This document shows, piece by piece, positions 1 to 64,000 of a DNA stretch of 64,000 bases (position 1 is its first letter; every line of letters begins with the position of its first letter). A model generated the notes under the pieces. That model was not told where the DNA came from. It saw only the letters and a program-made list of their open reading frames with translations, and made no database searches. The DNA is taken from NCBI GenBank assembly GCA_965235115.1, contig OZ249442.1, positions 27,466,001 to 27,530,000 on the forward strand. Reading direction: 5' to 3'. This stretch comes from Laetmonice hystrix (Eukaryota). A program made the position numbers and the translations under genes.

Positions 1-1546
1 GGACCAGATTCTCACAGACACTGATCGAATTGTTTACAATGTCACTTGGGGGTGCCACTTGTGTAATGTCGATCCGAGCCTAACTGCGTGCCCTCTACGG
101 GAAGGTAGACTCTCCGCCAACATCAAGGCTAAAGATCGCCAGGTAGCTCTTCCAGTTGCTGCTTCCTATATTACATACCTTCAAATCTAATTTTCCGTTC
201 CGATTTCCATTCCGTTAGCCAGAAGGAGTTCTAAATGTTGCAATGTATGATGTATGTCGTGTCCTATAGAATATGTAGGCTTACCGCTACCACATTTGTA
301 TATTTCAGGAGATGCGCGTCGTCCTGACTCAGCTCACCTTCAATTCCAAGTACTGGCTTCAGGTGAACTTAAGAGGGCAGGTCTACAGTTCGGTCTTCTT
401 CACTCCAGCCTGCCGCCAGGTGGACGCAACCTTCATGAGATGTGCCGGACCGGTGGAAACTCTGCCACCCAGGGTGAAGACCACTACCTTATGGGCAACG
501 CCTTCTAGCGGGACTTTAACATCTCTAATCACGACACCCATGTCAACGACCGATTCCGATCGTAGACCGAGTCTGTCTACAGAAAGGAAAGAACTTCCCA
601 AGGACATCAGGCCAAAACTTCACCAAGGAGGTACGTCAAGGGCATGTACATAACTTCAACTGAAAATTGTCATTGCTTGGATAGGGCACTTGTAGTAAAG
701 TCGGCCACAATGTCACAGTGTGTTAATTTCATTATGTTACAGGAGATAAATCCTGGTTGTCTGCTAACTGGCTGGTCCTACTGGTAGCGACGGCTGCCAG
801 TCTGACGACCATGGTTATCTTCACAGCCGGCCTCTATCTCTGCGGACATTTAACTCGACCCAAGGGTAAGTGACCGTTCAGTTTATATTCTCAACAGATT
901 CTATTATGTGCGAGAAGGAGTGAAACATGAGAAATATTTCTGAAATGAACCTTTTCCCTCTTATTAAAGTATTTGTCGTCTTTCCTCCACAGGATACTCG
1001 AGTGCTGGTCAGGCTAACATGACTTTCGCCAGCCTTCCGCCGTCATACAGTTCCCAAGCCAACCTTCACCAACTCCAGCACCTCCAGTTGTCTCAACGAC
1101 TCCTGGCCTACACCCCTGTACCACCCGCCTACGTCAGCGGCCCTGGCCACGCCCCCAGGCCCATGGTCATCGCCCCGCCCTACCACGGTCTGCCGCCATT
1201 GACTTGTCATCTTCAGGACATGGAGAATGACGTACAGCCCCGGCTTTCCTCCTGCCCAGACTCCCCCAAGGTACCAGTGCCTCATCAGCCCATCCCACAG
1301 ATCTCCATAGACCTGTGCTCCGACGAATCTGACGATGAGTTTCATCTGACACGAACCAGCACCCCGACAGCCACCGTCCTGCGGGTGACAGACAACCCCC
1401 TCTACCGACTTGAGCACAGTGCCCTCACAGTGCCACACCCGAGTCCAGTCCTCACGAGGAGCAGGTCGACTCAGGGCCTAGACCAGTGCTTCATCCGTGA
1501 CGACAGTGTGTCCAGTCATGAGCGTTCCCACCACAGCGACCTCTAG
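1..1546 (+). CDS. Gene A copy 0, 3' part only (FN3-like exon <1-142, exon 309-630, TM exon 743-865, tail exon 993-1546)
   Basis: GT/AG boundaries give one continuous frame: ...WDQILTDTDRIVYNVTWG...KDRQ | EMRVVLTQLTF...LHQG | GDKSWLSANWLVLLVATAASLTTMVIFTAGLYLCGHLTRPK | GYSSAGQANMTF...HSDL*. The 5' exons are outside the window. Matches the 3' half of copy 3, so it may carry the same upstream lesions. Confidence 0.88.
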
Positions 1547-2874
1547 CGTGTACCACAACGGTCTGCCGCTACAGATTGGGGCGCTAGTGGGGGTAGGGGT
1601 GCGCTGCCAGATGAGCGAAAACGTGCAATTGGTGCTATTTTATGATGCCAAATGTCAAAAATAAAATATTCAATTCGATTGTGTGTTCTGCCATTCTACG
1701 CTTAATTGATAGAACTTCAAAAGGTCTCTACCTTCTATGCGCCTTTTTATATTTCTTCTCTGCTCCCATGTCCTCAATAGTCGAATATCTAGGATTCACA
1801 TCTCAAAATGCCAGGCCTGTAATAAAAATTGACCCCGTTAAAACTCTATCCTGCAATCTTCTCATCTGAAGCCAGACGACGTGTTCATGAGGCCACGTAT
1901 AGTCTCAATCACTTCTATCGACGCCTATGCGTTAGGCCTATTAAAATAATAGGCCTGTTATCCCCAACCCGTTCCGTACTCTCGCCCACAGATCCCGTAG
2001 CATTTGAACGTCATTGGAGTTAGGAAGCTGATGTCTTGTCGTACACGTCACTGTTGTCCATATTTGTAATGAATTATTCGCTGTTTCTTTTCTTTCAAGA
2101 CATCACGTGTTTGAAATAGAATCATTAACAGTGCCGCGGCCGTCATTGTTGGCTTTACATTGCGATACACATAACTGTTTACCTCTACAAAGAGTCTTAT
2201 ATTTTGAAACTGTCTCTCATTATTTCTTCTTCAAGGTGGTAGCGTTCCCTCAACAACTATGGAGTTATACATGATGGAGAACGTGTTAAATTAAAAGTGT
2301 AGAATCGGATTGTACTTCCTAAATAGGACCAGACCAAAAGCAGTGCTTTGAATATAAGGCACCGCATGAGACCAAAGTTTTCACACCTTTTCACAAACGT
2401 TAACTACCTGCTGTTGTCTGTTCTTATGGCAACACCTGGGATAAATAATGTACATAAGGTCATAGGTCCACAGTAGCTCTTCAGCACTTGAATTGCACCT
2501 CAGACTGCCGAACAAGCTTCATAATCCAATATAGTTGGAAGAGGAACTCCGATTACATTCACAGAAAAGGTAAGACCCATTCTCACGTTTATGCCTATGT
2601 AGAGAAGAGAAATATATATATTCGTCAGGGGGAGAATAACTAACAGCTCTATCCTAAGAGCCTGTGCTCTGATAAAAAGGTTAAAGGAATTGGAAATTTA
2701 AGATAATGACATGTAAGCTTGGCCGAGAATCATATTTAGGGGCCGTATCAAATCTCAAGTATGTTTGGTCATATATACAGCATTAGGAGAGAAGGGGAAC
2801 GTTATTCGATATGTAACATTGCATTTATCTCCATTTCCAGAACGTTATCCCACTGGACAAGGTTATTAGACAAC

Positions 2875-3711
2875 ATGAATACCCTTAGAGTTTTCACACT
2901 CGTCATTATCGTTGCCTTCTTTGGTGAGTCGGTGAACTTTTTAATATATGTGATTATTGTATCTCAGTATCACTCTTTCAAATATTTCGGGGAAAGTTCT
3001 TAAGTTTGTATGCGTATCTGCTCAATTTCGCCTGTTTTGACACCTGAACAGCTTATTACTTTTACATTACGTTTTAGATTTTTCCAGATATTCAATGCCC
3101 GATGTCCTCTTCAAAGATATGGTTTAATTGTTTAAAAATACCCCATTTCTGATGTCCTGAATATCCTTTAATAGGTCAAGGTGAAAATGCCACCACATCC
3201 GGCCCAACAACGGCAGTGGTTTCCAGCACAGATCCATTGACAATGGTCACAGATTCGTCCTCTGTGACAAACGACACAGTAACGGCGATTACTGGAACGG
3301 TTGAGGCCACCACCACGGCGGAAGGAAACGCAACAGACGCCACAACAGAGGTCAGTATGATTTCTTACACATTATGATAAAATAGAGGGGAAAATATTCC
3401 CATGGAAACTTCCATGGATATACTCGTATTTCTTCCTGCCTTTAGGTGGCAAAGGTTATCTTTAGAAGTTTAAGTGCAATTTATGTCAGTCCATTTTACA
3501 CGCAATCATACGAAAGATAATTCATTTGTAAAGATTTATCGAGAAAAACACATATTTTCGGTCACGACTGCTTGTTTAAAGATTATTTTCCATTCCTTTG
3601 CATTACTGACAGACACCGGATTCGTCTCAGAACAGCGCCCACGTTCTTTCCAGCTCTGTGGTCATGGCCACATCGGCCATTGCCACATACAGCGCCCTCT
3701 TACGAATTTAA
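2875..3711 (+). CDS. Gene B copy 1: 107-aa Ser/Thr-rich glycoprotein with signal peptide and putative GPI signal (exons 2875-2923, 3175-3350, 3613-3711)
   Basis: ATG...TTTG|gtgagt (phase 1), taatag|GTCAAGGT...ACAGAG|gtcagt (phase 0), tgacag|ACACCG...TAA. Product MNTLRVFTLVIIVAFFGQGENATTSGPTTAVVSSTDPLTMVTDSSSVTNDTVTAITGTVEATTTAEGNATDATTETPDSSQNSAHVLSSSVVMATSAIATYSALLRI*. Three N-x-T sequons and hydrophobic N and C termini. Confidence 0.85.
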
Positions 3712-4209
3712 CCGTGACGTCACGACCATTCCTCATGTGATCGCGCTGAACCAATCGTCAGCAAGCTAGAGACTCAAGTTACGCTTTCTCCAGTATACAT
3801 ATTTTACGCAATATCTCCACGTGGTCAAGTGAACAAATTGATAAAAGTTTGGTGCTTAAATTGTTTAAATATTCTTATAGAAAAAAAACCAATGTATGTG
3901 TAGGTGCTAAAAGGGCAACTGAATACTACATTGACGTCCGGAGCATAACACTGGAGAAAAGCACTATTGTATGTAAAACTCGGTATTGTAAATAAAATGA
4001 AAGGTTTTTAAAAGCGAATTCATGTTTCTATTGCATAATTTCTTGTTGAACACGCACAAATAAACTTTATGTACAGCTGCCCACATTCTATCTGTCTACT
4101 AGCTGCCACTTTGGGATATTACCAAAAGTTTTTTGAGTATCTCTCCAAAAAAAAGTCCCATAGAAAATAGATGATCTTGACATACTTTCAAAAGCCCGTC
4201 TATAAAAAT

Positions 4210-4282
4210 TGACCACGATGGGACTCGAACCCACAATCTTCTGATTCGAAGTCAGACGCCTTATCCATTAGGCCACGCGGCC
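4210..4282 (-). tRNA. tRNA-Arg(UCG)
   Basis: Reverse complement GGCCGCGTGGCCTAATGGATAAGGCGTCTGACTTCGAATCAGAAGATTGTGGGTTCGAGTCCCATCGTGGTCA folds as a cloverleaf. Anticodon loop CT-TCG-AA, A and B boxes present, TTTTT Pol III terminator just downstream. Confidence 0.96.
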
Positions 4283-5708: not shown

Positions 5709-8700
5709 ATGAGGCTACAGGCCGTTCTCCTCCTGCTGATTACCGCCTGGCTACCGTCGACCTCAACCCTGGAGGGAGGTCTCTCCATCGAGCTGACCTC
5801 TTCACTCCAGGTGGACAGTCCGGCCCACCAATCGACTGGAGAGGGAACAGTCGGTCTAGAGATGATCGCCTCCTGTCGGGCCTCCTGTGGCGTCACAGTA
5901 AGCATTCTCCATTCATTGTACCAATAATTTTATTATGAAAATTAGGAAAACAATTTACAACAACTGTGTTTTAGATTAGAGCATTCCGTTAACAACAACC
6001 CGAATTTCACCTCAAAGACTATAAATCTGTTTTTTTTTTCTAGTTTCTTCTGTGGCCGCTAGGTGACGGGCAGTGCCTGAAGGAACCTCAATGTGTAACG
6101 GTCAGTATAAATTATATGCGTCACGATTTTGGCCACGATTCAGATACAGGCCGTAACAGCTATTTTTAGGGGTTTAAGCTTTTTTTATCCGTTCTCCAAG
6201 CCATTCATTCACTGTCTCTATCCCTTTCAGTGTTGGCGATTATGCGACCTTCTGTACACGGAAGAGCTCAAATGGAGAATGTCTTGTGACCAGGACGATT
6301 GTGTAAGTCATATTATATTTTATAACGTAAAAAACGACAGCGTGTAAATTGACCTGGAATAGGTATTCTGACTTGTACTTAAGAAATGATTCATATTCAA
6401 CATATTTTCATTCAGCTCGACGGATGTCAGACTGCCTGCAGTTTTGATTTCTCGCAGAGTCCCGATAAGCACACCTCTGTCTTTCAGTGTAGATCCTTAG
6501 GTATGCCATTTCGATTATAGTTTTTCTGTTAAGTAATTTCCGGATAAATAGTTATTTGATTATTTCCCTGGTTGTAACCTCTCCCAGTGTTGGCGACTGG
6601 CAGTTCCTTGTCGACCCCATACTGACCATTGTGGACGCCAACAAGTTACACGTCACGTTGTCTCCACCCGAATACCGCCCCGACCAGTCCCTGATTCCGA
6701 TCACCAGGTGGCAGGCCTATCGTTTACACTCTGCTGTTCAAGGATATCACGAACCCCCACTGGCGAAGGGTCACTTCGGTTAGTATGCAATGGCGTTTGT
6801 TAATCCAAATCGAAACTGTGTCGGCGAAATTTTATATAAAAGTTATTCTTGATTATCTTTTTAGAATCTAGGATGACATTTTGTATTTGCTGATTTCTAC
6901 TTTTAGACTAAGAACTTGAGAGCGATCGTGGAGGGACCACACGCAAGTCTTCCAGGCCTTCGGTTCCAGCTGCTCGCATCCTCAGAAGAAGGAACAGTTG
7001 CATATGTCTTCATTGGCTACAATCCTACCACCACACTACTACCACTGGGCCACACTACCTATACCTCTGCTACATTCAAGACATCTACAGAAACCCCGGC
7101 CTCAACAGTGAAGCATTCGATCACAATTTGGGTGTAAAATTGATGGCCTTATGTCATAGCTCATGAGCCAAGCAGACTATATTGTTGGGGTGCTTTACAA
7201 TAGATATTTCTCCATCCTACAGGGCCACACTGCAGCGATGACGTCACCAAAGGTATCAGTTGCCGTCACCGAGGATGGAAGCATTGAAGCCACCATAACG
7301 TGGGACCAGATTCTCACAGACACTGATCGAATTGTTTACAATGTCACTTGGGGGCGCCACTCGTGTAATGTCGATCCGAGCCTAACTGCGTGCCCTCTAC
7401 GGGAAGGTAGACTCTCCGCCAACATCAAGGCTAAAGATCGCCAGGTAGCTCTTCCAGTTGCTACTTCCTCTACTACATACCTTCAAATCTAATTTTCCGT
7501 TCCGATTTCCATTCCGTTAGCCAGAATGTTGCAACGTATGATGTATGTCGTGTCCTATAGAATATGTAGGCTTACCGCTACCACATTTGTATATTTCAGG
7601 AGATGCGCGTCGTCCTGACTCAGCTCACCTTCAATTCCAAGTACTGGCTTCAGGTGAACTTAAGAGGGCAGGTCTACAGTTCGGTCTTCTTCACTCCAGC
7701 CTGCCGCCAGGTGGACGCAACCTTCATGAGATGTGCCGGACCGGTGGAAACTCTGCCACCCAGGGTGAAGACTACTACCTTATGGGCAACGCCTTCTAGC
7801 GGGACTTTAACATCTCTACTCACGACACCCATGTCAACGACCGATTCCGATCGTAGACCGAGTCTGTCTACAGAAAGGAAAGAACTTCCCAAGGACATCA
7901 GGCCAAAACTTCACCAAGGGGGTACGTCAAGGGCATGTACATAACTTCAACTGAAAATTGTCATTGCTTGGATAGGGCACTTGTAGTAAAGTCGGTCACA
8001 ATGTCACAGTGTGTTAATTTCATTATGTTACAGGAGATAAATCCTGGTTGTCTGCTAACTGGCTGGTCCTACTGGTAGCGACGGCTGCCAGTCTGACGAC
8101 CATGGTTATCTTCACAGCCGGCCTCTATCTCTGCGGACGTTTAACTCGACTCAAGGGTAAGTGACCATTCACTTTAGGCTGGTCAGGCTAACATGACTTT
8201 CGCCAGCCTTCCGCCGTCATACAGTTCCCAAGCCAACCTTCACCAACTCCAGCACCTCCAGTTGTCTCAACGACTCCTGGCCTACACCCCTGTACCACCC
8301 GCCTACGTCAGCTGCCCTGGCCACGCCCCCAGGCCCATGGTCATCGCCCCGCCCTACCACGGTCTGCCGTCATTGACTTGTCACCTTCAGGACATGGAGG
8401 ATGACGTACAGCCCCGGCTTTCCTCCTGCCCAGACTCCCCCAAGGTACCAGTGCCTCATCAACCCATCCCACAGATCTCCATAGACTTGTGCTCCGACGA
8501 ATCTGACGATGAGTTTCATCTGACACGAACCAGCACCCCGACAGCCACCGTCCTGCGGGTGACAGACAACCCCCTCTACCGACTTGAGCACAGTGCCCTC
8601 ACAGTGCCACACCCGAGTCCAGTCCTCACGAGGAGTAGGTCGACCCAGGGCCTAGACCAGTGCTTCATCCGTGACGACAGTGTCTCCAGTCATGAGCGTT

Positions 8701-8720
8701 TCCACCACAGCGACCTCTAG
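5709..8720 (+). pseudogene. Gene A copy 1, disabled
   Basis: Relative to intact copies: donor GT>AT at 6465, acceptor AG>AA at 6576-6577, +T frameshift at 6692, weakened donor after the next exon, and loss of the tail-exon acceptor (net -117 bp near 8172). Confidence 0.8.
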
Positions 8721-10024: not shown

Positions 10025-11615
10025 ATGAATACAGTGGTCCCCCTCATAAGCGACCACCCCTGCTGTAGAGAGAAAGTGGTCGCTAGTGGCGGGTGGTCGC
10101 CTAAACGAGGGGTTGTTAAGTACGCATAGTTACCACCAGGTGGCTGCATATGAGATAACTACACACAGTTAACACTAGGTGGCGACTTCCCAGTGAGATT
10201 TGATGATGCCATTTCTGTGATGTGTCCAGCAATAGAGATTGAATCTGAATGGTGACTGATCCTGGTCAGACGGCATATGTAGAAAATCGTACTCTGCACC
10301 TGTGTATACATGAGTCTGGTTTGCCTCAGACATTTTGTTGCTTCAACCAGCCAGTTGGTGACATACCGTTTTTTCAACAGGCATGGTAGTAGGAGGGGGA
10401 GCAAAACCGTTAGCTTAAAGTGTGATGGAAGGTTGGGCCGTGTGATGGAAGTCGGGCGGGTAAGGTGAGACACGTGGCCGGCCATTGTGGGATGGAAGTG
10501 GGTGGGGGGGGGGCGGTGTTGGTGTTAGGTCAGCAGGGTGCCAGGCAGGCGGGCATGGGGAGACAAGTGTTATGACTAGCCAGGGCTGGCTGATTCTCAA
10601 AGGCTGGTCGCTGATAACGGGTGACCGGTGGAGTTGATGCAGGGATATGCCGGTCGCTGGTCGTTAGTGCCGGGTGGTCGCTTATAGGGGTGGAATTATA
10701 GTGTGAAGTGGTTAATGCAGTGGAAATGTGGTCGCTAGAGGCGGGTGGTCGCTTATAAGGGGTGGTCTTTAAGAGGGGGACCACTGTACCCTTAGAGTTT
10801 TCACACTCGTCATTATCGTTGCCTTCTTTGGTGAGTCGGTGAACATTTTAATATGTGATTATCGTATCTTAGTATCACTCTCTCAAATATTACGGGGAAA
10901 GTTCTTAAGTTTGTATGCGTATCTGCTCAATTTCGCCCGTTTTCACACCTGAACAGCTTATTACTTTTACATTACGTTTTAGATTTTTCCAGATATTCAA
11001 TGCCAGATGGCCTCTTCAAAAATATGGTTTAATTGTTTAAAAATACCCCATTTCTGATGTCCTGAATATCCTTTAATAGGTGAAGGTGAAAATGCCACCA
11101 CATCCGGCCCAACAACGGCAGTGGTTTCCAGCACAGATCCATTGACAATGGTCACAGATTCGTCCTCTGTGACAAACGACACAGTAACGGCGATTACTGG
11201 AACGGTTGAGGCCACCACCACGGCGGAAGGAAACGCAACAGACGCCACAACAGAGGTCAGTATGATTTCTTACACATTATGATAAAATACAGGGGTAAAT
11301 ATTCCCATGGAAACTTCCATGGATATACCCGTATCTCTTTCTGTCTCTAGGTGGCAAGGTTAACTTTAGAAGCTTAAGTGCAATTTATGTCAGTCCATTT
11401 TACACGCAATCATACGAAAGATAATTCATTTGTAAATATTTATCCAGTAAAACACATATTTTCGGTCACGACTGCTTGTTTAAAGATAATTTTCCATTCC
11501 TTTTCATTACTGACAGACACCGGATTCGTCTCAGAACAGCGCCCACGTCCTTTCCAGCTCTGTGGTCATGGCCATATCGGCCATTGCCACATACAGCGCC
11601 CTCTTACGAATTTAA
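10025..11615 (+). pseudogene. Gene B copy 2, interrupted after codon 2 by a MITE
   Basis: ATG AAT A is followed by the 755-bp element and the signal peptide resumes at 10787. Exons 2 and 3 are otherwise open. Confidence 0.85.
10032..10786. mobile_element. Non-autonomous Tc1/mariner-pogo-type DNA transposon (MITE), 755 bp, TA target-site duplication
   Basis: Ends CAGTGGTCCCCCTCATAAGCGACCACCCC...GGGGTGGTCTTTAAGAGGGGGACCACTG (first 14 bp a perfect inverted repeat, ~28 bp imperfect). TA at 10030-10031 and 10787-10788. Empty site GAA-TA-CCCTT in other units. Subterminal GTGGTCGC repeats. No intact transposase ORF. Confidence 0.93.
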
Positions 11616-12115
11616 CCGTGACGTCACGACCATTCCTCATGTGATCACGCTGAACCAATCGTCAGCAAGCTAGAGACTCAAGTTACGCTTTCTCCAGTAT
11701 ACATATTTTACGCAATATCTCCACGTGGACAAGTGAACAAATTGACAAAAGTTTATTGCTTAAATTGTTTAAATATTCTTATAGAAAAAAAAACCAATGT
11801 ATGTGTAGGTGCTAAAAGGGCAACTGAATACTACATTGACGTCCGGAGCATAACACTGGAGAAAAGCACTATTGTATGTAAAACTCGGTATTGTAAATAA
11901 AATGAAAGGTTTTTAAAAGCGAATTCATGTTTCTATTGCATAATTTCTTGTTGAACACGCACAAATAAACTTTATGTACAGCTGCCCACATTCTATCTGT
12001 CTACTAGCTGCCACTTTGGGATATTACCAAAAGTTTTTTTGAGTATCTCTCCAAAAAAAAGTCCCATAGAAAATAGATGATCTTGACATACTTTCAAAAG
12101 CCCGTCTATAAAAAT

Positions 12116-12188
12116 TGACCACGATGGGACTCGAACCCACAATCTTCTGATTCGAAGTCAGACGCCTTATCCATTAGGCCACGCGGCC
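12116..12188 (-). tRNA. tRNA-Arg(UCG)
   Basis: Same sequence as 4210-4282, with T5 terminator. Confidence 0.96.
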
Positions 12189-12538
12189 ACCAATATACAG
12201 CCTTTTCCAAATTTCGTAACACTGAGAGAAAACTCGATTAATACACGTTTAGAGTGCACGGTGAGTGTACATGTCAGTGTGAATTTCCTGTTGACACAAC
12301 CCCATGGGTGATAAGTGTAATTATTCACGATCCATACCATATGGTCCCTCTTTCTGCAAAATCAAAATTTGAAGTGACAGCTAGTAGAAGTCGTGTCAAA
12401 GCGTTCTCTGTGTCTGTATTTGAGGCCTTTGTCGGTATTACTCAAAGAGAGAGCGTCAGAGGCGTCACCGTGGCGGATTGGGCCAGGTCAAAGGAGGAGA
12501 GAGCGGGTGGGGTGAGGCTGTCGTGGGCGGGGTGAGGC

Positions 12539-12542
<4 letters not shown>

Positions 12543-12590: not shown

Positions 12591-12596
<6 letters not shown>

Positions 12597-13771
12597 AGTG
12601 GGCGGGGTGAGACTGTTGTGGTCGGGCCCCAGCTCAAAGAGAGGGCGGGTGACAGGTAACCGTGGCCGGCTCAAATGGTCAACAGACAGGGTCATTCGGC
12701 CCACCTCGGGACTGTCCGGGCGGCACAAGTCAGTAGGCTGCCGAATAGTCCGGTGAAAGGACTTCCGTTTTCGTAACGCTATGGTGTGGGAGTGATACGG
12801 TCGTGGGGATTCTATATTTATATTCTTACCCGTGACGTCACGGCAGTTCACTGACTTGAGCCGTCCAGACCACAACTAGCGAAGCGACCGGAAGTTGGGC
12901 CGAGGTTTTCCGAATGCAGACAAGGTGTGACCGTGGTTGGTGGTGACCGGCTCGAAAGGGAAACGGGAAAGGTGTGACCTAGTTAGACTAGTCAACCCCT
13001 AGTCATTTCTCTGCCGACTAGGGTTCGACGGTTTTAACATTTTAAACAAAGATGACCGAGTAGTGGAAAGTGGGCACGACTCTTTCAGACTAACTTTCCA
13101 AAAACTGTTTGTAATAGCGGGGCACTATTCGGACTTAGTTATTTGTTTAAAAGGTGAAACTGTCTAAAATAAAGTCTACCCTGACAAAGATGAAAAACAA
13201 AAAGAAGAAAACCGTCCGTCCACGTGTTTAACTACTCTAAGTTTTACAGTGGTTGGTGGCGGTTGGTTCAAAGGGGGAGAGGGCGAGGTGTGACCGTTAC
13301 GGGAAGGCAGGCGGGTCACTCCTCGCCGGGACTGCCCTATTCACACCTATAGCTCCCGGCCTAGGGTGGCGGCTATGATCTCGACTCGTGAAATTCCTCT
13401 AAGGCCGCATTTTTTCACACATCCACTTACAAAGGACATGTCAAAGCCTTTGAAGGGGCAGCCTCCACCGAGTGGGATGCTATATAAGTCAGTTCCCTGG
13501 ACACAGAAATCAGAACCTTGTCGACCGTCACAGACGTCGGACATCATATCACGGATTGCATTGGACTGCTGTAAACACGGGACATACGACCAGTTTGGAA
13601 GCTTCACTAGGTATGATTCAGCTTATAATCAGCACTGCAGGGAGCGGCAAGATCTGTTTAGGTTACTACAACAATATAAAGTTATCCTTGAGCATACAGT
13701 TTTTAATTGCTCTTATATTTTTTGACAATGCCATTTCTGTTTCAGACTCGAATTCAGGGGCTACCTTCACC

Positions 13772-16700: not shown

Positions 16701-16916
16701 GACGATGAGTTTCATCTGACACGAACCAGCACCCCGACAGCCACCGTCCTGCGGGTGACAGACAACCCCCTCTACCGACTTGAGCACAGTGCCCTCACAG
16801 TGCCACACCCGAGTCCAGTCCTCACGAGGAGCAGGTCGACTCAGGGCCTAGACCAGTGCTTCATCCGTGACGACAGTGTGTTCAGTCATGAGCGTTCCCA
16901 CCACAGCGACCTCTAG
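13772..16916 (+). CDS. Gene A copy 2, intact ~662-aa type I membrane protein (signal peptide, anosmin-like Cys box, two FN3-like domains, TM, PPxY/NPxY tail)
   Basis: Exons 13772-13960, 14105-14161, 14292-14363, 14477-14525, 14639-14838, 14968-15168, 15291-15512, 15679-16000, 16113-16235 and 16363-16916 join in frame at GT/AG with compatible phases. A second phase-1 donor 36 nt downstream of 14525 is possible. The family call rests on Cys spacing and the FN3 W/Y pattern only. Confidence 0.83.
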
Positions 16917-18250: not shown

Positions 18251-19087
18251 ATGAATACCCTTAGAGTTTTTACACTCGTCATTATCGTCGCTTTCTTTGG
18301 TGAGTCGGTGAACTTTTTAATATATGTGATTATCGTATCTCAGTATCACTCTTTCAAATATTTCGGGGAAAGTTCTTAAGTTTGTATGCGTATCTGCTCA
18401 ATTTCGCCTGTTTTGACACCTGAACAGCTTATTACTTTTACATTACGTTTTAGATTTTTCCAGATATTCAATGCCCGATGTCCTCTTCAAAAATATGGTT
18501 TAATTGTTTAAAAATACCCCATTTCTGATGTCCTGAATATCCTTTAATAGGTCAAGGTGAAAATGCCACCACATCCGGCCCAACAACGGCAGTGGTTTCC
18601 AGCACAGATCCATTGACAATGGTCACAGATTCGTCCTCTGTGACAAACGACACAGTAACGGCGATTACTGGAACGGTTGAGGCCACCACCACGGCGGAAG
18701 GAAACGCAACAGACGCCACAACAGAGGTCAGTATCATTTCTTACACATTATGATAAAATAGAGGGGAAAATATTCCCATGGAAACTTCCATGGATATACT
18801 CGTATTTCTTCCTGCCTTTAGGTGGCAAAGGTTAACTTTAGAAGTTTAAGTGCAATTTATGTCAGTCCATTTTACATGCAATCATACGAAAGATAATTCA
18901 TTTGTAAAGATTTATCCAGAAAAACACATATTTTCGGTCACGACTGCTTGTTTAAAGATTATTTTCCATTCCTTTGCATTACTGACAGACACCGCGTTCG
19001 TCTCAGAACAGCGCCCACGTTCTTTCCAGCTCTGTGGTCATGGCCATATCGGCCATTGCCACATACAGCGCCCTCTTACGAATTTAA
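18251..19087 (+). CDS. Gene B copy 3 (107-aa putative GPI-anchored micro-mucin), intact
   Basis: Same three-exon structure as copy 1, splice sites intact, few substitutions. Confidence 0.83.
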
Positions 19088-48867: not shown

Positions 48868-51800
48868 ATGAGGCTACAGGCCGTTCTCCTCCTGCTGATT
48901 ACCGCCTGGCTACCGTCGACCTCAACCCTGAAGGGAGGTCTCTCCATCGAACTGACCTCTTCACTCCAGGCGGACAGTCCGGCCCACCAATCGACTGGAG
49001 AGGGAACAGTCGGTCTAGAGATGATCGCCTCCTGTCGGGCCTCCTGTGGCGTCACGGTAAGCATTCTCCATTCATTGTACCAGTAATTTTATGATGAAAA
49101 TTATGAAAACAATTTACAACAACTGTGTTTTAGATTAGAGCATTCCGTTAACAACAACCCGGATTTCACCTCATGTCTGTAAATCTGGGTTTTTTTTCTA
49201 GTTTCTTCAGTGGCCGCTAGGTGACGGGCAGTGCCTGGAGGAACCTCAATGTGTAACGGTCAGTATAAATTATATGCGTCACGATTTTGGCCACGATTCA
49301 GATACAGGTCGTAACAGCTATTTTTAGGGGTTTAAGCTTTTTTTATCCGTTCTCCAAGCCATTCATTCACTGTCTCTATCCCTTTCAGTGTTGGCGATTA
49401 TGCGACCTCCTGTACACGGAAGAGCTCAAATGGAGAATGTCTTGTGACCAGGACGATTGTGTAAGTCAAATTATATTTTATAACGTAAAAAACGACAGCG
49501 TGTAAATTGACCTGGAATAGGTATTCTGACTAGTACTTAAGATATGATTCATATTCAACATATTTTCATTCAGCTCGACGGATGTCAGACTGCCTGCAGT
49601 TTTGATTTCTCGCAGAGTCCCGGTAAGCACACCTCTGTCTTTCAGTGTAGGTCCTTAGGTATGCTATTTCGATTATAGTTTTTCTGTTATGTAATTTCCA
49701 GATTAATAGTTATTTGATTATTTCCCTGGTTGTAGTCTCTCCCAGTGTTGGCGACTGGCAGTTCCTTGTCGACCCCATACTGACCATTGTGGACGCCAAC
49801 AAGTTACACGTCACGTGGTCTCCACCCGAATACCGCCCCCACCAGTCCCGATTCCGATCACCAGGTGGCAGGCCTATCGTTTACACTCTGCTGTTCAAGG
49901 ATATCACGAACCCCCACTGGCGAAGGGTCACTTCGGTTAGTATGCAATGGCGTTTGTTAATCCAAATCGAAACTGTGTCGGCAAAATATAGGTTATTCTT
50001 GATTATCTTTTTAGAATCTAGGATGACCTTTTTTTATTTGCTGATTTCTACTTTTAGACCATGAACTTGAGAGCGATCGTGGAAGGACCACACGCAAGTC
50101 TTCCAGGCCTTCGGTTCCAGCTGCTCGCATCCTCAGAAGAAGGAACAGTTGCATATGTCTTCATTGGCTACAATCCTACCACCACACTACTACCACTGGA
50201 CCACACTACCTATACCTCTGCTACATTCAAGACATCTACAGAAACCCCGGCCTCAACAGTGAGTTGTGAAGCTTTCGGCCCCAATTTGGGTGTAAAATTG
50301 ATGGCCTTATGTCATAGCTCATGAGCCAAGCAGACTATATTGTTGGGGTGCTTTACAATAGATATTTCTCCATCCTACAGGGCCACACTGCAGCAATGAC
50401 GTCACCAAAGGTATCAGTTGCCGTCACCGAGGATGGAAGCATTGAAGCCACCATAACGTGGGACCAGATTCTCACAGACACTGATCGAATTGTTTACAAT
50501 GTCACTTGGGGGCGCCACTCGTGTAATGTCGATCCGAGCCTAACTGCGTGCCCTCTACGGGAAGGTAGACTCTCCGCCAACATCAAGGCTAAAGATCGCC
50601 AGGTAGCTCTTCGAGTTGCTGCTTCCTATATTACATACCTTCAAATCTAATTTTGCGTTCCGATTTCCATTCCGTTAGCCAGAAGGAGTTCTAAATGTTG
50701 CAATGTATGATGTATGTCGTGTCCTATAGAATATGTAGGCTTACCGCTACCACATTTGTATATTTCAGGAGATGCGCGTCGTCCTGACTCAGCTTACCTT
50801 TAATTCCAAGTACTGGCTTCAGGTGAACTTAAGAGGGCAGGTCTACAGTTCGGTCTTCTTCACTCCAGCCTGCCGCCAGGTGGACGCAACCTTCATGAGA
50901 TGTGCCGGGCCGGTGAAAACTCTGCCAGCCAGGGTGAAGACCACTACCTTATGGGCAACGCCTTCTAGCAGGAGTTTAACATCTCTACTCACGACACCCA
51001 TGTCAACGACCGATTCCGATCGTAGACCGAGTCTGTCTACAGGAGGGAAAGAACTTCCCAAGGACATCAGGCCAAAACTTCATCAAGGGGGTACGTCAAG
51101 GGCATGTACATAACTTCAACTAAACATTGTCATTGGTTGGATAGGGCATTTGTAGTAAAGTCGGCCACAATGTCACAGTTTGTTAATTTCATTATGTTAC
51201 AGGAGATAAATCCTGGTTGTCTGCTAACTGGCTGGTCCTACTGGTAGCGACGGCTGCCAGTCTGACGACCATGGTTATCTTCACAGCCGGCCTCTATCTC
51301 TGCGGATGTTTAACTCGACCCAAGGGTAAGTGACCATTCAGTTTATATTCTCAACAGATTCTATTATGTGCGAGAAGGAGTGAAACATGAGAAATATTTC
51401 TGAAATGAACCATTTCCCTCTTATCAAAGTAGTTGTCGTCTTTCTTCCACAGGGTACTCCAGTGCAGGCCAGGCTAACATGACTTTCGCCAGCTTTCCGC
51501 CGTCATACAGTTCCCAAGCCAACCTGTACCAACTCCAGCACCTCCAGTTGTCTCAACGACTCCTGGCCTACACCCCTGTACCACCCGCCTACGTCAGCTG
51601 CCCTGGCCACGCCCCCAGCCCCATGGTCATCGCCCCGTCCTACCACGGTCTGCCGTCATTGACTTGTCACCTTCAGGACATGGAGGATGACGTACAGCCC
51701 CGGCTTTCCTCCTGCCCAGACTCCCCCAAGGTACCAGTGCCTCATCAACCCATCCCACAGATCTCCATAGACCTGTGCTCCGACGAATCTGACGATGAGT

Positions 51801-52006
51801 TTCATCTGACACGAACCAGCACCCCGACAGCCACCGTCCTGCGGGTGACAGACAACCCCCTCTACCGACTTGAGCACAGTGCCCTCACAGTGCCACACCC
51901 GAGTCCAGTCCTCACGAGGAGCAGGTCGACTCAGGGCCTAGACCAGTGCTTCATCCGTGACGACAGTGTGTCCAGTCATGAGCGTGTCCACCACAGCGAC
52001 CTCTAG
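48868..52006 (+). CDS. Gene A copy 7, intact (tail same as copy 5)
   Basis: All splice sites present and no frameshift seen. Confidence 0.82.
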
Positions 52007-56331: not shown

Positions 56332-59300
56332 ATGAGGCTACAGGCCGTTCTCCTCCTGCTGATTACCGCCTGGCTACCGTCGACCTCAACCCTGAAGGGA
56401 GGTCTCTCCATCGAACTGACCTCTTCACTCCAGGCGGACAGTCCGGCCCACCAATCGACTGGAGAGGGAACAGTCGGTCTAGAGATGATCGCCTCCTGTC
56501 GGGCCTCCTGTGGCGTCACGGTAAGCATTCTCCATTCATTGTACCAGTAATTTTATGATGAAAATTATGAAAACAATTTACAACAACTGTGTTTTAGATT
56601 AGAGCATTCCGTTAACAACAACCCGGATTTCACCTCATGTCTGTAAATCTGGGTTTTTTTTCTAGTTTCTTCAGTGGCCGCTAGGTGACGGGCAGTGCCT
56701 GGAGGAACCTCAATGTGTAACGGTCAGTATAAATTATATGCGTCACGATTTTGGCCACGATTCAGATACAGGTCGTAACAGCTATTTTTAGGGGTTTAAG
56801 CTTTTTTTATCCGTTCTCCAAGCCATTCATTCACTGTCTCTATCCCTTTCAGTGTTGGCGATTATGCGACCTCCTGTACACGGAAGAGCTCAAATGGAGA
56901 ATGTCTTGTGACCAGGACGATTGTGTAAGTCAAATTATATTTTATAACGTAAAAAACGACAGCGTGTAAATTGACCTGGAATAGGTATTCTGACTAGTAC
57001 TTAAGATATGATTCATATTCAACATATTTTCATTCAGCTCGACGGATGTCAGACTGCCTGCAGTTTTGATTTCTCGCAGAGTCCCGGTAAGCACACCTCT
57101 GTCTTTCAGTGTAGGTCCTTAGGTATGCTATTTCGATTATAGTTTTTCTGTTATGTAATTTCCAGATTAATAGTTATTTGATTATTTCCCTGGTTGTAGT
57201 CTCTCCCAGTGTTGGCGACTGGCAGTTCCTTGTCGACCCCATACTGACCATTGTGGACGCCAACAAGTTACACGTCACGTGGTCTCCACCCGAATACCGC
57301 CCCCACCAGTCCCGATTCCGATCACCAGGTGGCAGGCCTATCGTTTACACTCTGCTGTTCAAGGATATCACGAACCCCCACTGGCGAAGGGTCACTTCGG
57401 TTAGTATGCAATGGCGTTTGTTAATCCAAATCGAAACTGTGTCGGCAAAATATAGGTTATTCTTGATTATCTTTTTAGAATCTAGGATGACCTTTTTTTA
57501 TTTGCTGATTTCTACTTTTAGACCATGAACTTGAGAGCGATCGTGGAAGGACCACACGCAAGTCTTCCAGGCCTTCGGTTCCAGCTGCTCGCATCCTCAG
57601 AAGAAGGAACAGTTGCATATGTCTTCATTGGCTACAATCCTACCACCACACTACTACCACTGGACCACACTACCTATACCTCTGCTACATTCAAGACATC
57701 TACAGAAACCCCGGCCTCAACAGTGAGTTGTGAAGCTTTCGGCCCCAATTTGGGTGTAAAATTGATGGCCTTATGTCATAGCTCATGAGCCAAGCAGACT
57801 ATATTGTTGGGGTGCTTTACAATAGATATTTCTCCATCCTACAGGGCCACACTGCAGCAATGACGTCACCAAAGGTATCAGTTGCCGTCACCGAGGATGG
57901 AAGCATTGAAGCCACCATAACGTGGGACCAGATTCTCACAGACACTGATCGAATTGTTTACAATGTCACTTGGGGGCGCCACTCGTGTAATGTCGATCCG
58001 AGCCTAACTGCGTGCCCTCTACGGGAAGGTAGACTCTCCGCCAACATCAAGGCTAAAGATCGCCAGGTAGCTCTTCGAGTTGCTGCTTCCTATATTACAT
58101 ACCTTCAAATCTAATTTTGCGTTCCGATTTCCATTCCGTTAGCCAGAAGGAGTTCTAAATGTTGCAATGTATGATGTATGTCGTGTCCTATAGAATATGT
58201 AGGCTTACCGCTACCACATTTGTATATTTCAGGAGATGCGCGTCGTCCTGACTCAGCTTACCTTTAATTCCAAGTACTGGCTTCAGGTGAACTTAAGAGG
58301 GCAGGTCTACAGTTCGGTCTTCTTCACTCCAGCCTGCCGCCAGGTGGACGCAACCTTCATGAGATGTGCCGGGCCGGTGAAAACTCTGCCAGCCAGGGTG
58401 AAGACCACTACCTTATGGGCAACGCCTTCTAGCAGGAGTTTAACATCTCTACTCACGACACCCATGTCAACGACCGATTCCGATCGTAGACCGAGTCTGT
58501 CTACAGGAGGGAAAGAACTTCCCAAGGACATCAGGCCAAAACTTCATCAAGGGGGTACGTCAAGGGCATGTACATAACTTCAACTAAACATTGTCATTGG
58601 TTGGATAGGGCATTTGTAGTAAAGTCGGCCACAATGTCACAGTTTGTTAATTTCATTATGTTACAGGAGATAAATCCTGGTTGTCTGCTAACTGGCTGGT
58701 CCTACTGGTAGCGACGGCTGCCAGTCTGACGACCATGGTTATCTTCACAGCCGGCCTCTATCTCTGCGGATGTTTAACTCGACCCAAGGGTAAGTGACCA
58801 TTCAGTTTATATTCTCAACAGATTCTATTATGTGCGAGAAGGAGTGAAACATGAGAAATATTTCTGAAATGAACCATTTCCCTCTTATCAAAGTATTTGT
58901 CGTCCTTCCTCCACAGGGTACTCGAGTGCGGGCCAGGCTAACATGACTTTCGCCAGCCTTCCGCCGTCATACAGTTCCCAAGCCAACCTTCACCAACTCC
59001 AGCACCTCCAGTTGTCTCAACGACTCCGGGCCTACACCCCTGTACCACCCGCCTACGTCAGCTGCCCTGGCCACACCCCCAGCCCCATGGTCATCGCCCC
59101 GCCCTACCACGGTCTGCCGTCATTGACTTGTCACCTTCAGGACATGGAGGATGACGTACAGCCCCGGCTTTCCTCCTGCCCAGACTCCCCCAAGGTACCA
59201 GTGCCTCATCAGCCCATCCCTCAGATCTCCATAGACCTGTGCTCCGACGAATCTGACGATGAGTTTCATCTGACACGAACCAGCACCCCGACAGCCACCG

Positions 59301-59470
59301 TCCTGCGGGTGACAGACAACCCCCTCTACCGACTTGAGCACAGTGCCCTCACAGTGCCACACCTGAGTCCAGTCCTCACGAGGAGTAGGTCGACCCAGGG
59401 CCTAGACCAGTGCTTCATCCGTGACGACAGTGTGTCCAGTCATGAGCGTTTCCACCACAGCGACCTCTAA
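56332..59470 (+). CDS. Gene A copy 8, intact (tail resembles copy 6; TAA stop)
   Basis: All splice sites present and no frameshift seen. Confidence 0.82.

Positions 59471-62872: not shown

Positions 62873-62916
<44 letters not shown>
62873..62916. repeat. (AG)22 microsatellite
   Basis: Read directly from the sequence. Confidence 0.96.
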
Positions 62917-62922
<6 letters not shown>

Positions 62923-63810
62923 AGGGAGTGGGCGGGGTGAGACTGTTGTGGGCGGGCCCCAGCTCAAAGAGAGGGCGGGTGACAGGTAACCGTGGCCGGC
63001 TCAAATGGTCAACAGACAGGGTCATTCGGCCCACCTCGGGACTGTCCGGGCGGCACAAGTCAGTAGGCTGCCGAATAGTCCGGTGAAAGGACTTCCGTTT
63101 TCGTAACGCTATGGTGTGGGAGTGATACGGTCGTGGGGGATTCTATATTTATATTCTTACCCGTGACGTCACGGCAGTTCACTGACTTGAGCCGTCCAGA
63201 CCACAACTAGCGAAGCGACCGGAAGTTGGGCCGAGGTTTTCCGAATGCAGACAAGGTGTGACCGTGGTTGGTGGTGACCGGCTCGAAAGGGAAACGGGAA
63301 AGGTGTGACCTAGTTAGACTAGTCAACCCCTAGTCAGTTCTCTGCCGACTAGGGTTCGACGGTTTTAACATTTTAAATAAAGATGACCGAATAGTGGAAA
63401 GTGTGCACGACTCTTTCAGGCTAACTTTCCAAAAACTGTTTGTTAGAGCAGGCTACTATTCGGACATAGTTAATTGTTTAAAAGGTGAAACTGCTTAAAA
63501 AAAACTCTACCCTGACGAAGCTGAAAAACAAAAAGAAGAAACCGCCCGTCCACGGGTTTAACTACTCTAAGTTTTACAGTGGTTGGTGGCGGTTGGCTCA
63601 AAGGGGCAGAGGGCGAGGTGTGACCGTTACGGGAAGGTAGGCGGGTCACTCCTCGCCGGGACTGCCCTATTCACACCTATAGCTCCCGGCCTAGGGTGGC
63701 GGCTATGATCTCGACTCGTGAAATTCCTCTAAGGCCGCATTTTTTCACACATCCACTTACAAAGAACATGTCAAAGCCTTTGAAGGGGCAGCCTCCACCG
63801 AGTGGGATGC

Positions 63811-63940
63811 TATATAAGTCAGTTCCCTGGACACAGAAATCAGAACCTTGTCGACCGTCACAGACGTCGGACATCATATCACGGATTGCATTGGACTGCT
63901 GTAAACACGGGACATACGACCAGTTTGGAAGCTTCACTAG
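63811..63940 (+). promoter_or_regulatory. TATA box and probable non-coding exon 1 of gene A copy 9 (coding exons beyond the window)
   Basis: TATATAAG at 63811 and donor CTAG|gtataa after 63940, by homology with the other units. Confidence 0.6.
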
Positions 63941-64000
63941 GTATAATTCAGCTTATAATCAGCACTGCAGGGAGCGTCAAGATCTGTTTAGGTTACGACA

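What the first reader, a model, noticed from the sequence alone, without database searches (positions are those of the whole stretch)
1..64000. Co-amplified three-gene cassette: membrane receptor-like gene, GPI micro-mucin and tRNA-Arg
Seen: each unit carries the same three genes in fixed order, at least 8.6 times, with five apparently intact gene A copies and seven intact gene B copies in this window. Established: tandem arrays of cell-surface protein genes in invertebrates are often linked to recognition, immunity or dosage selection. Inference: two unrelated surface proteins amplified together may act together (receptor plus glycocalyx partner), or one may be selected while the others hitchhike.
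Basis: partly seen in the sequence, partly recalled or inferred. Interest (0 to 1): 0.78.

Follow-up and report, generated by a model that had tools for sequence, protein, structure and literature searches.

The report
Tandem array: two surface genes plus tRNA
A 7.5-kb stretch carrying a membrane-protein gene, a tiny sugar-coated-peptide gene and an arginine tRNA gene is repeated head-to-tail about 29 times on one chromosome of an invertebrate, and the three genes most likely travel together only because they are neighbours, not because they work together.

Summary
The window holds about 8.6 copies of a 7.5-kb unit at 93-100% identity. It has 8 tRNA-Arg(TCG) genes, 8 gene A copies (5 intact) and 9 gene B copies (7 intact).

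The array is much larger than the window. It spans about 279 kb of contig C7 in two inverted arms, with at least 28 tRNAs, 26 gene B loci and 23 gene A copies or fragments. It is interrupted by Ty3/gypsy, LINE and MITE insertions.

- **Gene A:** 10 coding exons, 659 codons. It has a signal peptide, a ten-cysteine head, two beta-type modules, a transmembrane segment and a roughly 190-aa tail.
- **Gene B:** 3 exons, 107 aa. It has a signal peptide, an acidic 41% Ser/Thr core and a hydrophobic tail.

Both are real genes. Old paralogues elsewhere keep exactly the predicted exons, and indels and diversity are depleted in the exons. Neither has a Pfam family.

The paralogues of A and B are unlinked, and a sub-array carries B and the tRNA without A. 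A frameshifted A allele was itself amplified five times.

The best reading is a young tRNA-bearing macrosatellite grown by unequal recombination, with the genes co-amplified through linkage. A functional A-B partnership is unsupported. Expression and copy number could not be tested. The scan noted a similar tRNA-plus-gene array elsewhere in this genome.

The parts
1..64000 (+). About 8.6 head-to-tail copies of a 7.5-kb unit. Unit starts, taken at the tRNA, are 4209, 12115, 19586, 27126, (deletion junction 33089), 39756, 47208, 54672 and 62445. This is part of a ~279-kb array at G000:C7:27.2617-27.5408 Mb.
12115..12189 (-). tRNA-Arg(TCG), reference copy. Identical copies lie at 4209-4283, 19586-19660, 27126-27200, 39756-39830, 47208-47282, 54672-54746 and 62445-62519. 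Each is followed on its own strand by TTTTT.
13481..13610 (+). Putative gene A core promoter (TATATAA at 13481) and non-coding first exon. Donor at 13611, acceptor at 13745. This is the least variable part of the unit and is invariant in 14 units.
   Evidence: inference from sequence
13772..16916 (+). Gene A, reference intact copy. Coding exons: 13772-13960, 14114-14161, 14292-14363, 14477-14525, 14639-14838, 14968-15168, 15291-15512, 15679-16000, 16113-16235, 16363-16916 (1980 nt, 659 codons). It has a signal peptide, a 10-Cys head, two beta-type modules, Ser/Thr stalks, a transmembrane segment in exon 9 and a cytoplasmic tail in exon 10.
33950..37088 (+). Gene A, intact copy
41406..44544 (+). 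Gene A, intact copy
48868..52006 (+). Gene A, intact copy
56332..59469 (+). Gene A, intact copy
21318..24463 (+). Gene A pseudogene: -1 in exon 2 (two stops) and the shared +1 T insertion at exon 5 nt 114
5709..8720 (+). Gene A pseudogene: lost splice sites at exons 2, 4 and 5, the shared exon 5 +1 insertion, and a deletion in exon 10. Its twin lies at 28626-31637.
18251..19087 (+). Gene B, reference intact copy. Exons 18251-18299, 18551-18726, 18989-19087 (107 aa). It has a signal peptide, an acidic Ser/Thr-rich core with three N-x-T sites, and a hydrophobic C-terminus.
2875..3711 (+). Gene B, intact copy. Further intact copies lie at about 25792-26628, 38420-39256, 45872-46708, 53336-54172 and 61004-61946 (coordinates projected).
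10030..10788 (.). 757-bp MITE-like insertion with 20-nt terminal inverted repeats. It splits exon 1 of this unit's gene B.
32892..33092 (+). Truncated gene B (exon 1 only), ending at the ~1,985-bp deletion junction that also removed one tRNA
17284..17673 (.). Hypervariable spacer between A and B (unit positions about 5170-5560, highest diversity). In the unit at 54672 it holds a 19-bp minisatellite with 10 copies (59952-60145). The palindromic junction of the two array arms also lies at this unit position.

Best explanation
This is a young, still turning-over macrosatellite: a kilobase-scale tandem gene array. One ancestral 7.5-kb segment happened to hold three unrelated, independently transcribed genes. 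Gene A encodes a lineage-restricted type I membrane protein. Gene B encodes a 107-aa secreted or GPI-type Ser/Thr-rich peptide. The third is a canonical Pol III tRNA-Arg(UCG) gene.

Unequal crossing-over and multi-unit segmental duplication, plus one inversion, copied this segment to about 29 units. The genes are co-amplified because they are physically linked, not because A and B need each other.

Purifying selection, or biased conversion, keeps the tRNA nearly invariant, keeps gene B exons about 3-fold less diverse than their surroundings, and removes most indels from the exons of both genes. Gene A evolves by birth and death, with 10 of 23 copies intact.

The module shared by both unit types is gene B plus the tRNA. 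I therefore think dosage of one of these, more likely the tRNA, is what retains the array, and gene A is the more dispensable passenger.

Shown here: the array anatomy, the gene models, the constraint and the unlinked paralogues. Inferred: the promoters, the membrane topology, the GPI anchoring and which element is the driver.
For: - **Array and higher-order structure.** Units tile 294 kb in two orientations. Pairwise unit divergence runs from 0.03% to 4.5%. Near-identical units lie 15-23 kb apart (27462665 vs 27485586 at 0.03%; 27385161, 27400632 and 27455199 at 0.3-0.6%), which shows multi-unit duplication.
- **Gene A is real.** A paralogue on C19 conserves all 10 coding exons (exon 5 at 68% aa, exon 9 at 79%, exon 10 at 30%), with the matches confined to the exon blocks. 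dN/dS is about 0.27 with synonymous sites saturated. An exon-sized relative from another data set, P0002, is 45% identical over the whole of exon 5.
- **Constraint on gene A inside the array.** Indel events per kb are 2.5 in A exons against 14.6 in A introns (p=1.7e-4). pN/pS is 0.46. Segregating sites are 4.5% in exons against 6.4% in introns.
- **Gene B is real.** Genomic paralogues match exactly its three predicted exons (C1:14975758-14976543). Their exon 2 is open and 70-87% identical at the protein level. 21 of 25 array copies are intact. Diversity (pi) is 0.010-0.0125 in exons 2-3 (0.030 in the 49-nt exon 1) against 0.024-0.043 in introns and flanks (p=5e-9). pN/pS is 0.39.
- **tRNA.** It scores 69.7 bits in Rfam. 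19 of 26 copies are identical. Pi is 0.0027 against 0.03-0.045 in the flanks (p=1.4e-5). A TTTTT terminator follows each copy.
- **Linkage rather than partnership.** The C19 paralogue of A has no tRNA and no gene B within 30 kb. No gene A DNA match lies near the gene B paralogues. The left-arm units share only the gene B module and the tRNA with the main unit. Five gene A copies share one identical +1 frameshift. The share of intact copies of A, B and the tRNA scales with target size: expected 0.80-0.87 for B against 0.84 observed.
- **Precedent.** A 7.3-kb tRNA-bearing VNTR with 9-43 units exists in humans (PMC4041453). [quoted passage not shown]
Against: - No RNA data could be found for this stretch. 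Transcription of A, of B and of each tRNA copy is therefore unproven.
- Copy number rests on a single assembly.
- Lower exon diversity among related copies is not fully independent evidence, because the copies share ancestry and may exchange sequence by conversion.
- All three elements show constraint, so sequence alone cannot tell a 'passenger' from a 'driver'.
- Gene A's promoter region is the most conserved part of the unit, even in units whose gene A is broken. That fits poorly with A being a dispensable passenger.
- The direction of change between the A-containing and A-less unit types is unknown.
Confidence: 0.68

Rival explanations
1. Functional cassette: A (receptor) and B (glycocalyx peptide) act together at the cell surface and are co-selected as a unit, so amplification raises the dose of a two-part system.
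For: Order, strand and spacing are fixed in every main unit. Both genes show purifying selection inside the array. Both products are predicted to be extracellular.
Against: Paralogues of A and B elsewhere are unlinked. Units carrying B and the tRNA without A exist. 13 of 23 gene A copies are broken or partial while their neighbouring B copies stay intact. A frameshifted A allele was itself amplified. Fixed order is what any tandem duplication of one segment produces.
Confidence: 0.1
2. Gene A dosage or diversity is the selected trait, as in a recognition or immune-type receptor array evolving by birth and death. B and the tRNA are passengers.
For: The mix of intact and pseudogene copies is typical of receptor arrays. 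The gene A promoter and 5' exon form the least variable part of the unit. Indels are 6-fold depleted in A exons.
Against: There is no sign of diversifying selection: pN/pS is 0.36 in the ectodomain exons and 0.51 in the tail exon. Under half of the copies are intact. The A-less sub-array keeps B and the tRNA. The tRNA and B are more constrained than A.
Confidence: 0.15
3. Assembly artefact: a few real copies were inflated by mis-assembly of haplotypes or of long reads.
For: Some unit pairs differ by only 0.03-0.19%. No independent read check was possible.
Against: Most units differ by 1.3-4.5% and carry private indels, a MITE, LTR and LINE insertions, a 1,985-bp deletion and distinct pseudogene alleles. 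The 294 kb read here contain no N. Within the 23-kb higher-order duplicate, one unit pair differs by 1.28% and its neighbour by 0.03%, which is not what a duplicated haplotype would give.
Confidence: 0.04
4. Gene B is not a gene. It is only a chance open frame with good splice sites in a conserved spacer.
For: No Pfam family and no relative in the word search. No RNA evidence. The composition is low-complexity.
Against: Paralogues at three other loci match only the three predicted exons. Their exon 2 stays open at 70-87% protein identity, while the whole C7 match, which includes intron 2, is 73% identical at the DNA level. Diversity drops at the exon borders inside the array. 21 of 25 copies keep the ATG, the splice sites, the frame and the stop.
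Confidence: 0.05

Closest known systems
Human tDNA variable-number tandem repeat at 1q23.3 (Darrow and Chadwick 2014, PMC4041453)
   Same: A kilobase-scale unit (7.3 kb there, 7.5 kb here) repeated head-to-tail tens of times (9-43 units per allele there). Functional-looking tRNA genes make up only a few percent of the unit, and the tRNA is far more conserved than the rest of the unit.
   Different: The abstract of that paper describes tRNA genes and a CTCF site in the unit and mentions no protein-coding gene. Here each unit also carries two spliced protein-coding genes under constraint. CTCF-type boundary function and copy-number variation were shown there and could not be tested here.
Gene-bearing macrosatellites (D4Z4/DUX4, CT47, RS447/USP17 and similar; from my own knowledge, not checked here)
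   Same: Tandem kb-sized units each contain a complete protein-coding gene, with a mix of intact and decayed copies and growth by unequal exchange.
   Different: To my knowledge those units hold one, usually intronless, gene and no Pol III gene. This unit holds an 11-exon gene, a 3-exon gene and a tRNA.
Pol III genes linked into repeat units of other multigene families (5S rDNA with histone, SL-RNA, snRNA or tRNA genes; summarised in PMC3464664)
   Same: A small Pol III gene rides in the repeat unit of tandemly arrayed Pol II genes and evolves in concert with them.
   Different: The known cases involve housekeeping, high-demand genes such as histones and snRNAs. Here the partners are two lineage-restricted surface-protein genes.
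CD24/CD52-type small GPI-anchored glycopeptides (from my own knowledge)
   Same: Gene B product: about 107-aa precursor, N-terminal signal peptide, short mature core with 41% Ser/Thr and three N-x-T sites, and a C-terminal hydrophobic stretch preceded by small residues.
   Different: No sequence relationship was detected (no Pfam hit). GPI attachment is only inferred.
Anosmin-1
   Same: Gene A has an N-terminal head of paired cysteines (three CxxxC, one Cx4C, one Cx5C), followed by beta-type modules with a fibronectin-III-like 'hVTW...Y.LLF' pattern.
   Different: It has no WAP domain. No exon reaches any Pfam fn3 or other model, even at E<=10. It is membrane-anchored with a long tail. The resemblance is untested beyond motif level.
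tRNA-Ser plus TALE-homeobox macrosatellite noted earlier in this same genome (scan note s1-306509, unchecked)
   Same: Tandem unit of one tRNA gene plus a protein-coding gene, more than 20 copies, and young.
   Different: According to that note the homeobox copies drift neutrally. Here both protein genes show constraint and are spliced.

Membership tests
Macrosatellite / tandem gene array grown by unequal exchange | Head-to-tail kb-sized units with high mutual identity | tested here: met
   Units of 7.45-7.9 kb at 93-100% identity. There are 8.6 in the window and about 29 in the array.
Macrosatellite / tandem gene array grown by unequal exchange | Higher-order (multi-unit) duplication pattern | tested here: met
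   Units 15-23 kb apart differ by 0.03-0.6%, while adjacent units differ by 1.5-3%. Shared pseudogene alleles recur with this period.
Macrosatellite / tandem gene array grown by unequal exchange | Copy-number variation between individuals | not testable with these tools
Functional nuclear tRNA-Arg(UCG) gene | Cloverleaf and sequence fit to the tRNA model, with anticodon TCG | tested here: met
   ARAGORN finds 8 of 8 in the window and 26 in 294 kb. Rfam RF00005 gives 69.7 bits against a gathering score of 29.
Functional nuclear tRNA-Arg(UCG) gene | Pol III terminator (T run) directly downstream | tested here: met
   TTTTT begins at the first base after every copy examined.
Functional nuclear tRNA-Arg(UCG) gene | Transcribed, processed and charged | not testable with these tools
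   No RNA run was available.
GPI-anchored mucin-like micro-glycoprotein (CD24/CD52-like) | N-terminal signal peptide | tested here: inconclusive
   Exon 1 gives MNTLRVFTLVIIVAFF, with a mean Kyte-Doolittle value of 2.0. No dedicated predictor was available.
GPI-anchored mucin-like micro-glycoprotein (CD24/CD52-like) | Short Ser/Thr-rich, glycosylatable mature peptide | tested here: met
   Exon 2 has 41% Ser+Thr, three N-x-T sequons, 8 Asp/Glu and no Lys/Arg.
GPI-anchored mucin-like micro-glycoprotein (CD24/CD52-like) | C-terminal GPI signal (small omega residues, spacer, hydrophobic tail) | tested here: inconclusive
   The sequence ...SSQNSAHVLSSS followed by VVMAISAIATYSALLRI (Kyte-Doolittle 2.03) fits the pattern. 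No GPI predictor or experiment was available.
GPI-anchored mucin-like micro-glycoprotein (CD24/CD52-like) | Sequence homology to CD24 or CD52 families | tested here: not met
   No Pfam family at E<=10 for exons 2 and 3. The word search found nothing.
Fibronectin-III receptor / anosmin-like protein | Recognisable fn3 domains | tested here: not met
   No Pfam match for any exon at E<=10. There were no fn3 chains among the PDB sequence hits for exons 5, 7 and 8. Caveat: each putative domain is split between two exons, and the joined protein was not searched.
Fibronectin-III receptor / anosmin-like protein | WAP (four-disulfide core) domain | tested here: not met
   No WAP match in any exon.
Type I membrane protein | Signal peptide plus a single transmembrane helix followed by basic residues | tested here: inconclusive
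   Exon 1 gives MRLQAILLLLITAWL. Exon 9 gives LVLLVATAASLTTMVIFTA (Kyte-Doolittle 2.14) followed by RLTRPK. The transmembrane exon is 79% conserved in the C19 paralogue. This rests on hydropathy only.

The most novel reading that the evidence does not exclude
In this spiralian genome, tRNA genes repeatedly seed or stabilise macrosatellites that drag neighbouring Pol II genes to high copy number. Examples are this array, the tRNA-Ser/homeobox array noted elsewhere in the genome, and the gene B plus tRNA core shared by two unit types here. If so, selection on tRNA dosage, or Pol III-linked replication and recombination instability, would be a general engine creating new multi-copy surface-protein gene families.
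Probability: 0.2. Interest if true: 0.6.

Novelty: new member of a known kind. Interest (0 to 1): 0.4.

Why it matters
The array is a clean natural example of how physical linkage alone can take three unrelated genes, transcribed by two different polymerases, to about 30 copies. It also shows how differently the passengers fare afterwards: the tRNA is nearly frozen, the tiny peptide gene is mostly intact, and more than half of the copies of the long membrane-protein gene are decayed.

It adds two lineage-restricted surface-protein families that standard domain searches miss. One of them, gene B, is a 107-aa precursor that an ORF-based annotation is likely to miss.

Together with a second tRNA-plus-gene array noted in the same genome, it gives a testable lead on whether tRNA genes promote tandem amplification. 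In kind, though, it is a tandem gene array. That is a well-known class, and no function has been shown.

Tried and rejected
- **Pfam.** Open frames and exact exons of gene A and gene B exons and P0002 gave nothing.
- **PDB sequence search.** Gene A exons 5, 7 and 8 gave only chance hits.
- **ESM Atlas.** Exon 8 gave no usable hit.
- **HMMER against 1.84 billion representatives.** A profile of exon 5 (array copy plus C19 paralogue) found one true relative, the 77-aa fragment P0002. The two other hits are repeat-driven artefacts.
- **Word search.** The open frame around gene B exon 2 found nothing.
- **Rfam at a permissive threshold.** The unit without its tRNAs gave nothing, so the hyper-conserved 300 bp upstream of gene A is not a known RNA.
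- **Promoter conservation.** The gene A promoter region shows no conservation with the C19 paralogue.
- **Progenitor copy.** No diverged gene A copy lies in the 59-kb gap between the two array arms.
- **RNA evidence.** No RNA run holds the stretch.
- **Read laying.** Local scripts still read the already-fetched files.
- **Genome letters.** The left end of the array (left of 27,266,001) and the gene B paralogue loci were therefore seen only as match tables.
- **Spliced proteins.** The joined A and B proteins were never searched or folded. That weakens the negative domain results for gene A.
- **Rejected ideas.** The unit is not a transposon or a virus-like element: it has no terminal repeats and no transposase or RT genes, and the RT and gag ORFs belong to separate Ty3/gypsy and LINE insertions.

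Full report
**Observation**

A self-comparison with one unit (window 12115-19585) tiles the whole window head-to-tail at 93-100% identity, apart from two short hypervariable pieces (59616-59949 at 80%; 20057-20136 at 92.5%). Periods are 7452-7906 bp. ARAGORN finds eight tRNA-Arg(TCG) genes on the minus strand, and Rfam scores them at 69.7 bits against a gathering score of 29. The single 12.6-kb interval is two units joined by a deletion of about 1,985 bp at 33089-33092, which removed gene B exons 2-3 and one tRNA.

**True extent**

The window is G000:C7:27466001-27530000 in a 627-Mb, 35-contig assembly. The layout is as follows.

- A minus-oriented arm runs from about 27.2617 to 27.3056 Mb.
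- A short plus-oriented piece lies at 27.3058-27.3079 Mb. The palindromic junction falls in the hypervariable spacer of the unit.
- About 59 kb of other DNA follows. It includes a single-exon LDLa/LRR/7TM receptor ORF.
- A plus-oriented arm then runs from 27.3679 to 27.5408 Mb. It is interrupted by Ty3/gypsy and LINE insertions.

In total I count 26 tRNA-Arg(TCG) in the fetched DNA, of which 19 are identical, plus two more to the left. There are 26 gene B loci and 23 gene A copies or fragments. The same tRNA also forms a classical dense cluster on C3:21.864-21.885 Mb.

**Gene A**

Conservation against a diverged paralogue on C19 (locus L001) marks ten coding blocks. A splice-site scan that keeps the frame gives these exons: 13772-13960, 14114-14161, 14292-14363, 14477-14525, 14639-14838, 14968-15168, 15291-15512, 15679-16000, 16113-16235 and 16363-16916. 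That is 1980 nt, or 659 codons plus a stop.

A TATATAA at 13481, a donor at 13611 and an acceptor at 13745 suggest a non-coding first exon. This region is the least variable part of the unit and is invariant in 14 units. This is inference.

Read exon by exon, the product has:
- a signal peptide;
- ten cysteines in five close pairs (three CxxxC, one Cx4C and one Cx5C);
- two beta-type modules with a fibronectin-III-like motif pattern, each split by an intron and each followed by a Ser/Thr-rich stretch;
- a 19-residue hydrophobic segment followed by RLTRPK;
- a roughly 190-residue tail containing NPLY, PPAY and an acidic cluster.

The paralogue keeps all ten exons (exon 5 at 68% aa, exon 9 at 79%, exon 10 at 30%). 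dN/dS is about 0.27 with synonymous sites saturated, so the family is old and constrained.

No exon matches any Pfam model, even at E<=10. PDB sequence searches gave only chance hits, and the ESM Atlas gave nothing. An exon 5 profile searched against 1.84 billion representatives found one genuine relative, P0002. This is an exon-sized 77-aa fragment from a Logan contig, 45% identical across the whole exon.

The failure to detect fibronectin-III domains is therefore weak evidence, and 'receptor-like' and 'anosmin-like' stay at motif level.

**Gene B**

The best model is 18251-18299, 18551-18726 and 18989-19087, giving 107 aa with good GT-AG sites. The product has:
- a hydrophobic N-terminus;
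- a 58-residue core with 41% Ser/Thr, three N-x-T sites, eight acidic and no basic residues;
- a C-terminus in which small residues precede a 17-residue hydrophobic tail, a GPI-signal-like layout.

The strongest evidence that it is a gene comes from three paralogous loci: C1:14975758-14976543, C7:29085730-29086903 and C7:29098540-29099672. The C1 locus matches only the three predicted exons. In all three, exon 2 is open and 70-87% identical at the protein level. Pfam and the word search found nothing outside this genome.

**State of the copies**

- **Gene A.** Ten of 23 copies keep the ATG, all splice sites, the frame and the stop. Five of these are in the window. Five copies share the same +1 T insertion at exon 5 nt 114, so a dead allele was itself amplified.
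- **Gene B.** 21 of 25 copies are intact, seven of them in the window. One window copy is split by a 757-bp element with 20-nt terminal inverted repeats, and one is truncated by the deletion.
- **Scaling.** The shares of intact copies scale with target size. If B were hit at gene A's per-base rate, 0.80-0.87 of its copies should be intact, and 0.84 are. Intactness alone therefore does not separate driver from passenger.

**Selection inside the array**

Among 14 full-length units, indel events per kb are 2.5 in A exons, 14.6 in A introns, 3.1 in B exons, 15.6 in B introns and 20.8 in spacers. Exon against intron gives p=2e-5.

Among intact gene A copies, pN/pS is 0.46. By region it is 0.36 in the ectodomain exons, 0.44 in the stalk exon and 0.51 in the tail exon. 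Exons have fewer segregating sites than introns, 4.5% against 6.4% (p=0.03).

For gene B, pi is 0.010-0.0125 in exons 2-3 (0.030 in the 49-nt exon 1) against 0.024-0.043 around them (p=5e-9), and pN/pS is 0.39. The tRNA has pi 0.0027 against 0.03-0.045 in its flanks (p=1.4e-5), and TTTTT follows it directly.

All three elements are therefore constrained, in the order tRNA > B > A. There is no sign of diversifying selection. One caveat applies: the copies share ancestry and may convert one another, so these tests are indicative and not exact.

**How the array grew**

Pairwise unit divergence runs from 0.03% to 4.5%. Near-identical units lie 15-23 kb apart, and pseudogene alleles recur with the same period. 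This means blocks of two or three units were duplicated, some very recently. The inverted-arm unit is as close to plus-arm units (1.3-2.7% to most; 3.7% to the divergent unit at 27520672) as those are to each other.

**Are A and B partners?**

- The C19 paralogue of A has no tRNA and no gene B within 30 kb.
- No gene A DNA match lies near the gene B paralogues.
- The leftmost units, with a period of about 7.0 kb, share only the gene B module and the tRNA flank with the main unit. They carry two unique spacers and a second, variant tRNA, and they have no trace of gene A.

The A-B adjacency is thus peculiar to this array, and the common core of both unit types is gene B plus the tRNA. I conclude that co-amplification reflects linkage. 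I cannot tell from sequence whether dosage of the tRNA or of B retains the array, or whether it is a largely neutral macrosatellite.

An earlier, unchecked note of this scan (s1-306509) describes a second array in this genome whose unit is a tRNA-Ser plus a homeobox gene. It made me weigh the tRNA more heavily as a possible driver. I did not test that note. Other notes call the organism a probable annelid, which I also did not test.

**Comparison with what is known**

- The closest published analogue is the human 7.3-kb tRNA-bearing VNTR at 1q23.3, with 9-43 units. There the tRNA genes are the conserved part of the unit (PMC4041453).
- Gene-bearing macrosatellites such as D4Z4 are known to me from general knowledge.

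This array combines both features with two spliced, lineage-restricted surface-protein genes. I file it as a new member of a known kind.

**Limits**

- No RNA run holds the stretch.
- Copy number, expression, GPI anchoring and membrane topology are untested.

Noticed in passing
window 13315-13614: This is the least variable 300 bp of the whole unit (pi 0.002-0.008), lower than any coding exon. It holds an invariant TATATAA at 13481 and a putative non-coding first exon of gene A. It is conserved even in units whose gene A is frameshifted. It has no Rfam match and no similarity to the region upstream of the C19 paralogue.
   Followed up: partly
window 10030-10788: A 757-bp insertion with 20-nt terminal inverted repeats (TACAGTGGTCCCCCTCATAA...), so MITE-like, splits exon 1 of one gene B copy.
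   Followed up: partly
window 59952-60145; also L002:6729-7226: A 19-bp minisatellite (GGCCGTCATTGCGCCAATC, about 10 copies) sits in the hypervariable spacer between genes A and B. The same repeat is expanded in the gene-A-less left-arm units. The palindromic junction of the two array arms (C7:27305614/27305838) lies at this unit position.
   Followed up: partly
window 19965-20189 (unit positions about 380-560): A length-variable (GA)n tract with G-rich 77-93-bp repeats lies just upstream of each tRNA, on the tRNA's own strand. Unit lengths differ mainly here.
   Followed up: no
G000:C7:27261665-27280000 (L002, L003): A second unit type of about 7.0 kb: gene B, a canonical tRNA-Arg and a variant tRNA-Arg (several substitutions), with two unique spacers of 2.25 and 1.25 kb and no gene A. 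Its gene B copies are the most diverged in the array (94-95%).
   Followed up: partly
L016:6773 to L017:3595; L018:8632 to L019:5059; L005:4492-6989: Ty3/gypsy-type elements (gag, aspartyl protease and RT ORFs) and an endonuclease/RT LINE fragment are inserted inside array units.
   Followed up: partly
L006:5125-6990 (-): A single-exon 622-aa ORF with LDL-receptor class A, leucine-rich repeats and a rhodopsin-type 7TM domain (an LGR or relaxin-receptor-like GPCR) lies in the 59-kb stretch between the two array arms.
   Followed up: no
G000:C3:21863966-21885229: A dense cluster of the same tRNA-Arg(TCG) (97-99% identical), with spacing that alternates between about 318 and about 425 bp. At least 14 copies were scored out of 85 genome-wide candidates.
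   Followed up: no
G000:C1:14975758-14976543; C7:29085730-29086903; C7:29098540-29099672: Diverged paralogues of gene B. The two on C7 lie 12.8 kb apart.
   Followed up: partly
L024:291-1544 and L024:4072-6678: To the right of the array lie a TMEM145-N-domain ORF and a long, highly repetitive Pro-rich ORF that matches the extensin-like Pfam model. The latter is probably low-complexity repeat DNA.
   Followed up: no
P0001 (956 aa): This protein has 11 repeats of ...SPLEYVPHKPSFLGPTGGG..., which resemble the loop SPPEYRPHQSRFRSPGG in gene A exon 5. I take this as chance repeat similarity, not homology.
   Followed up: no
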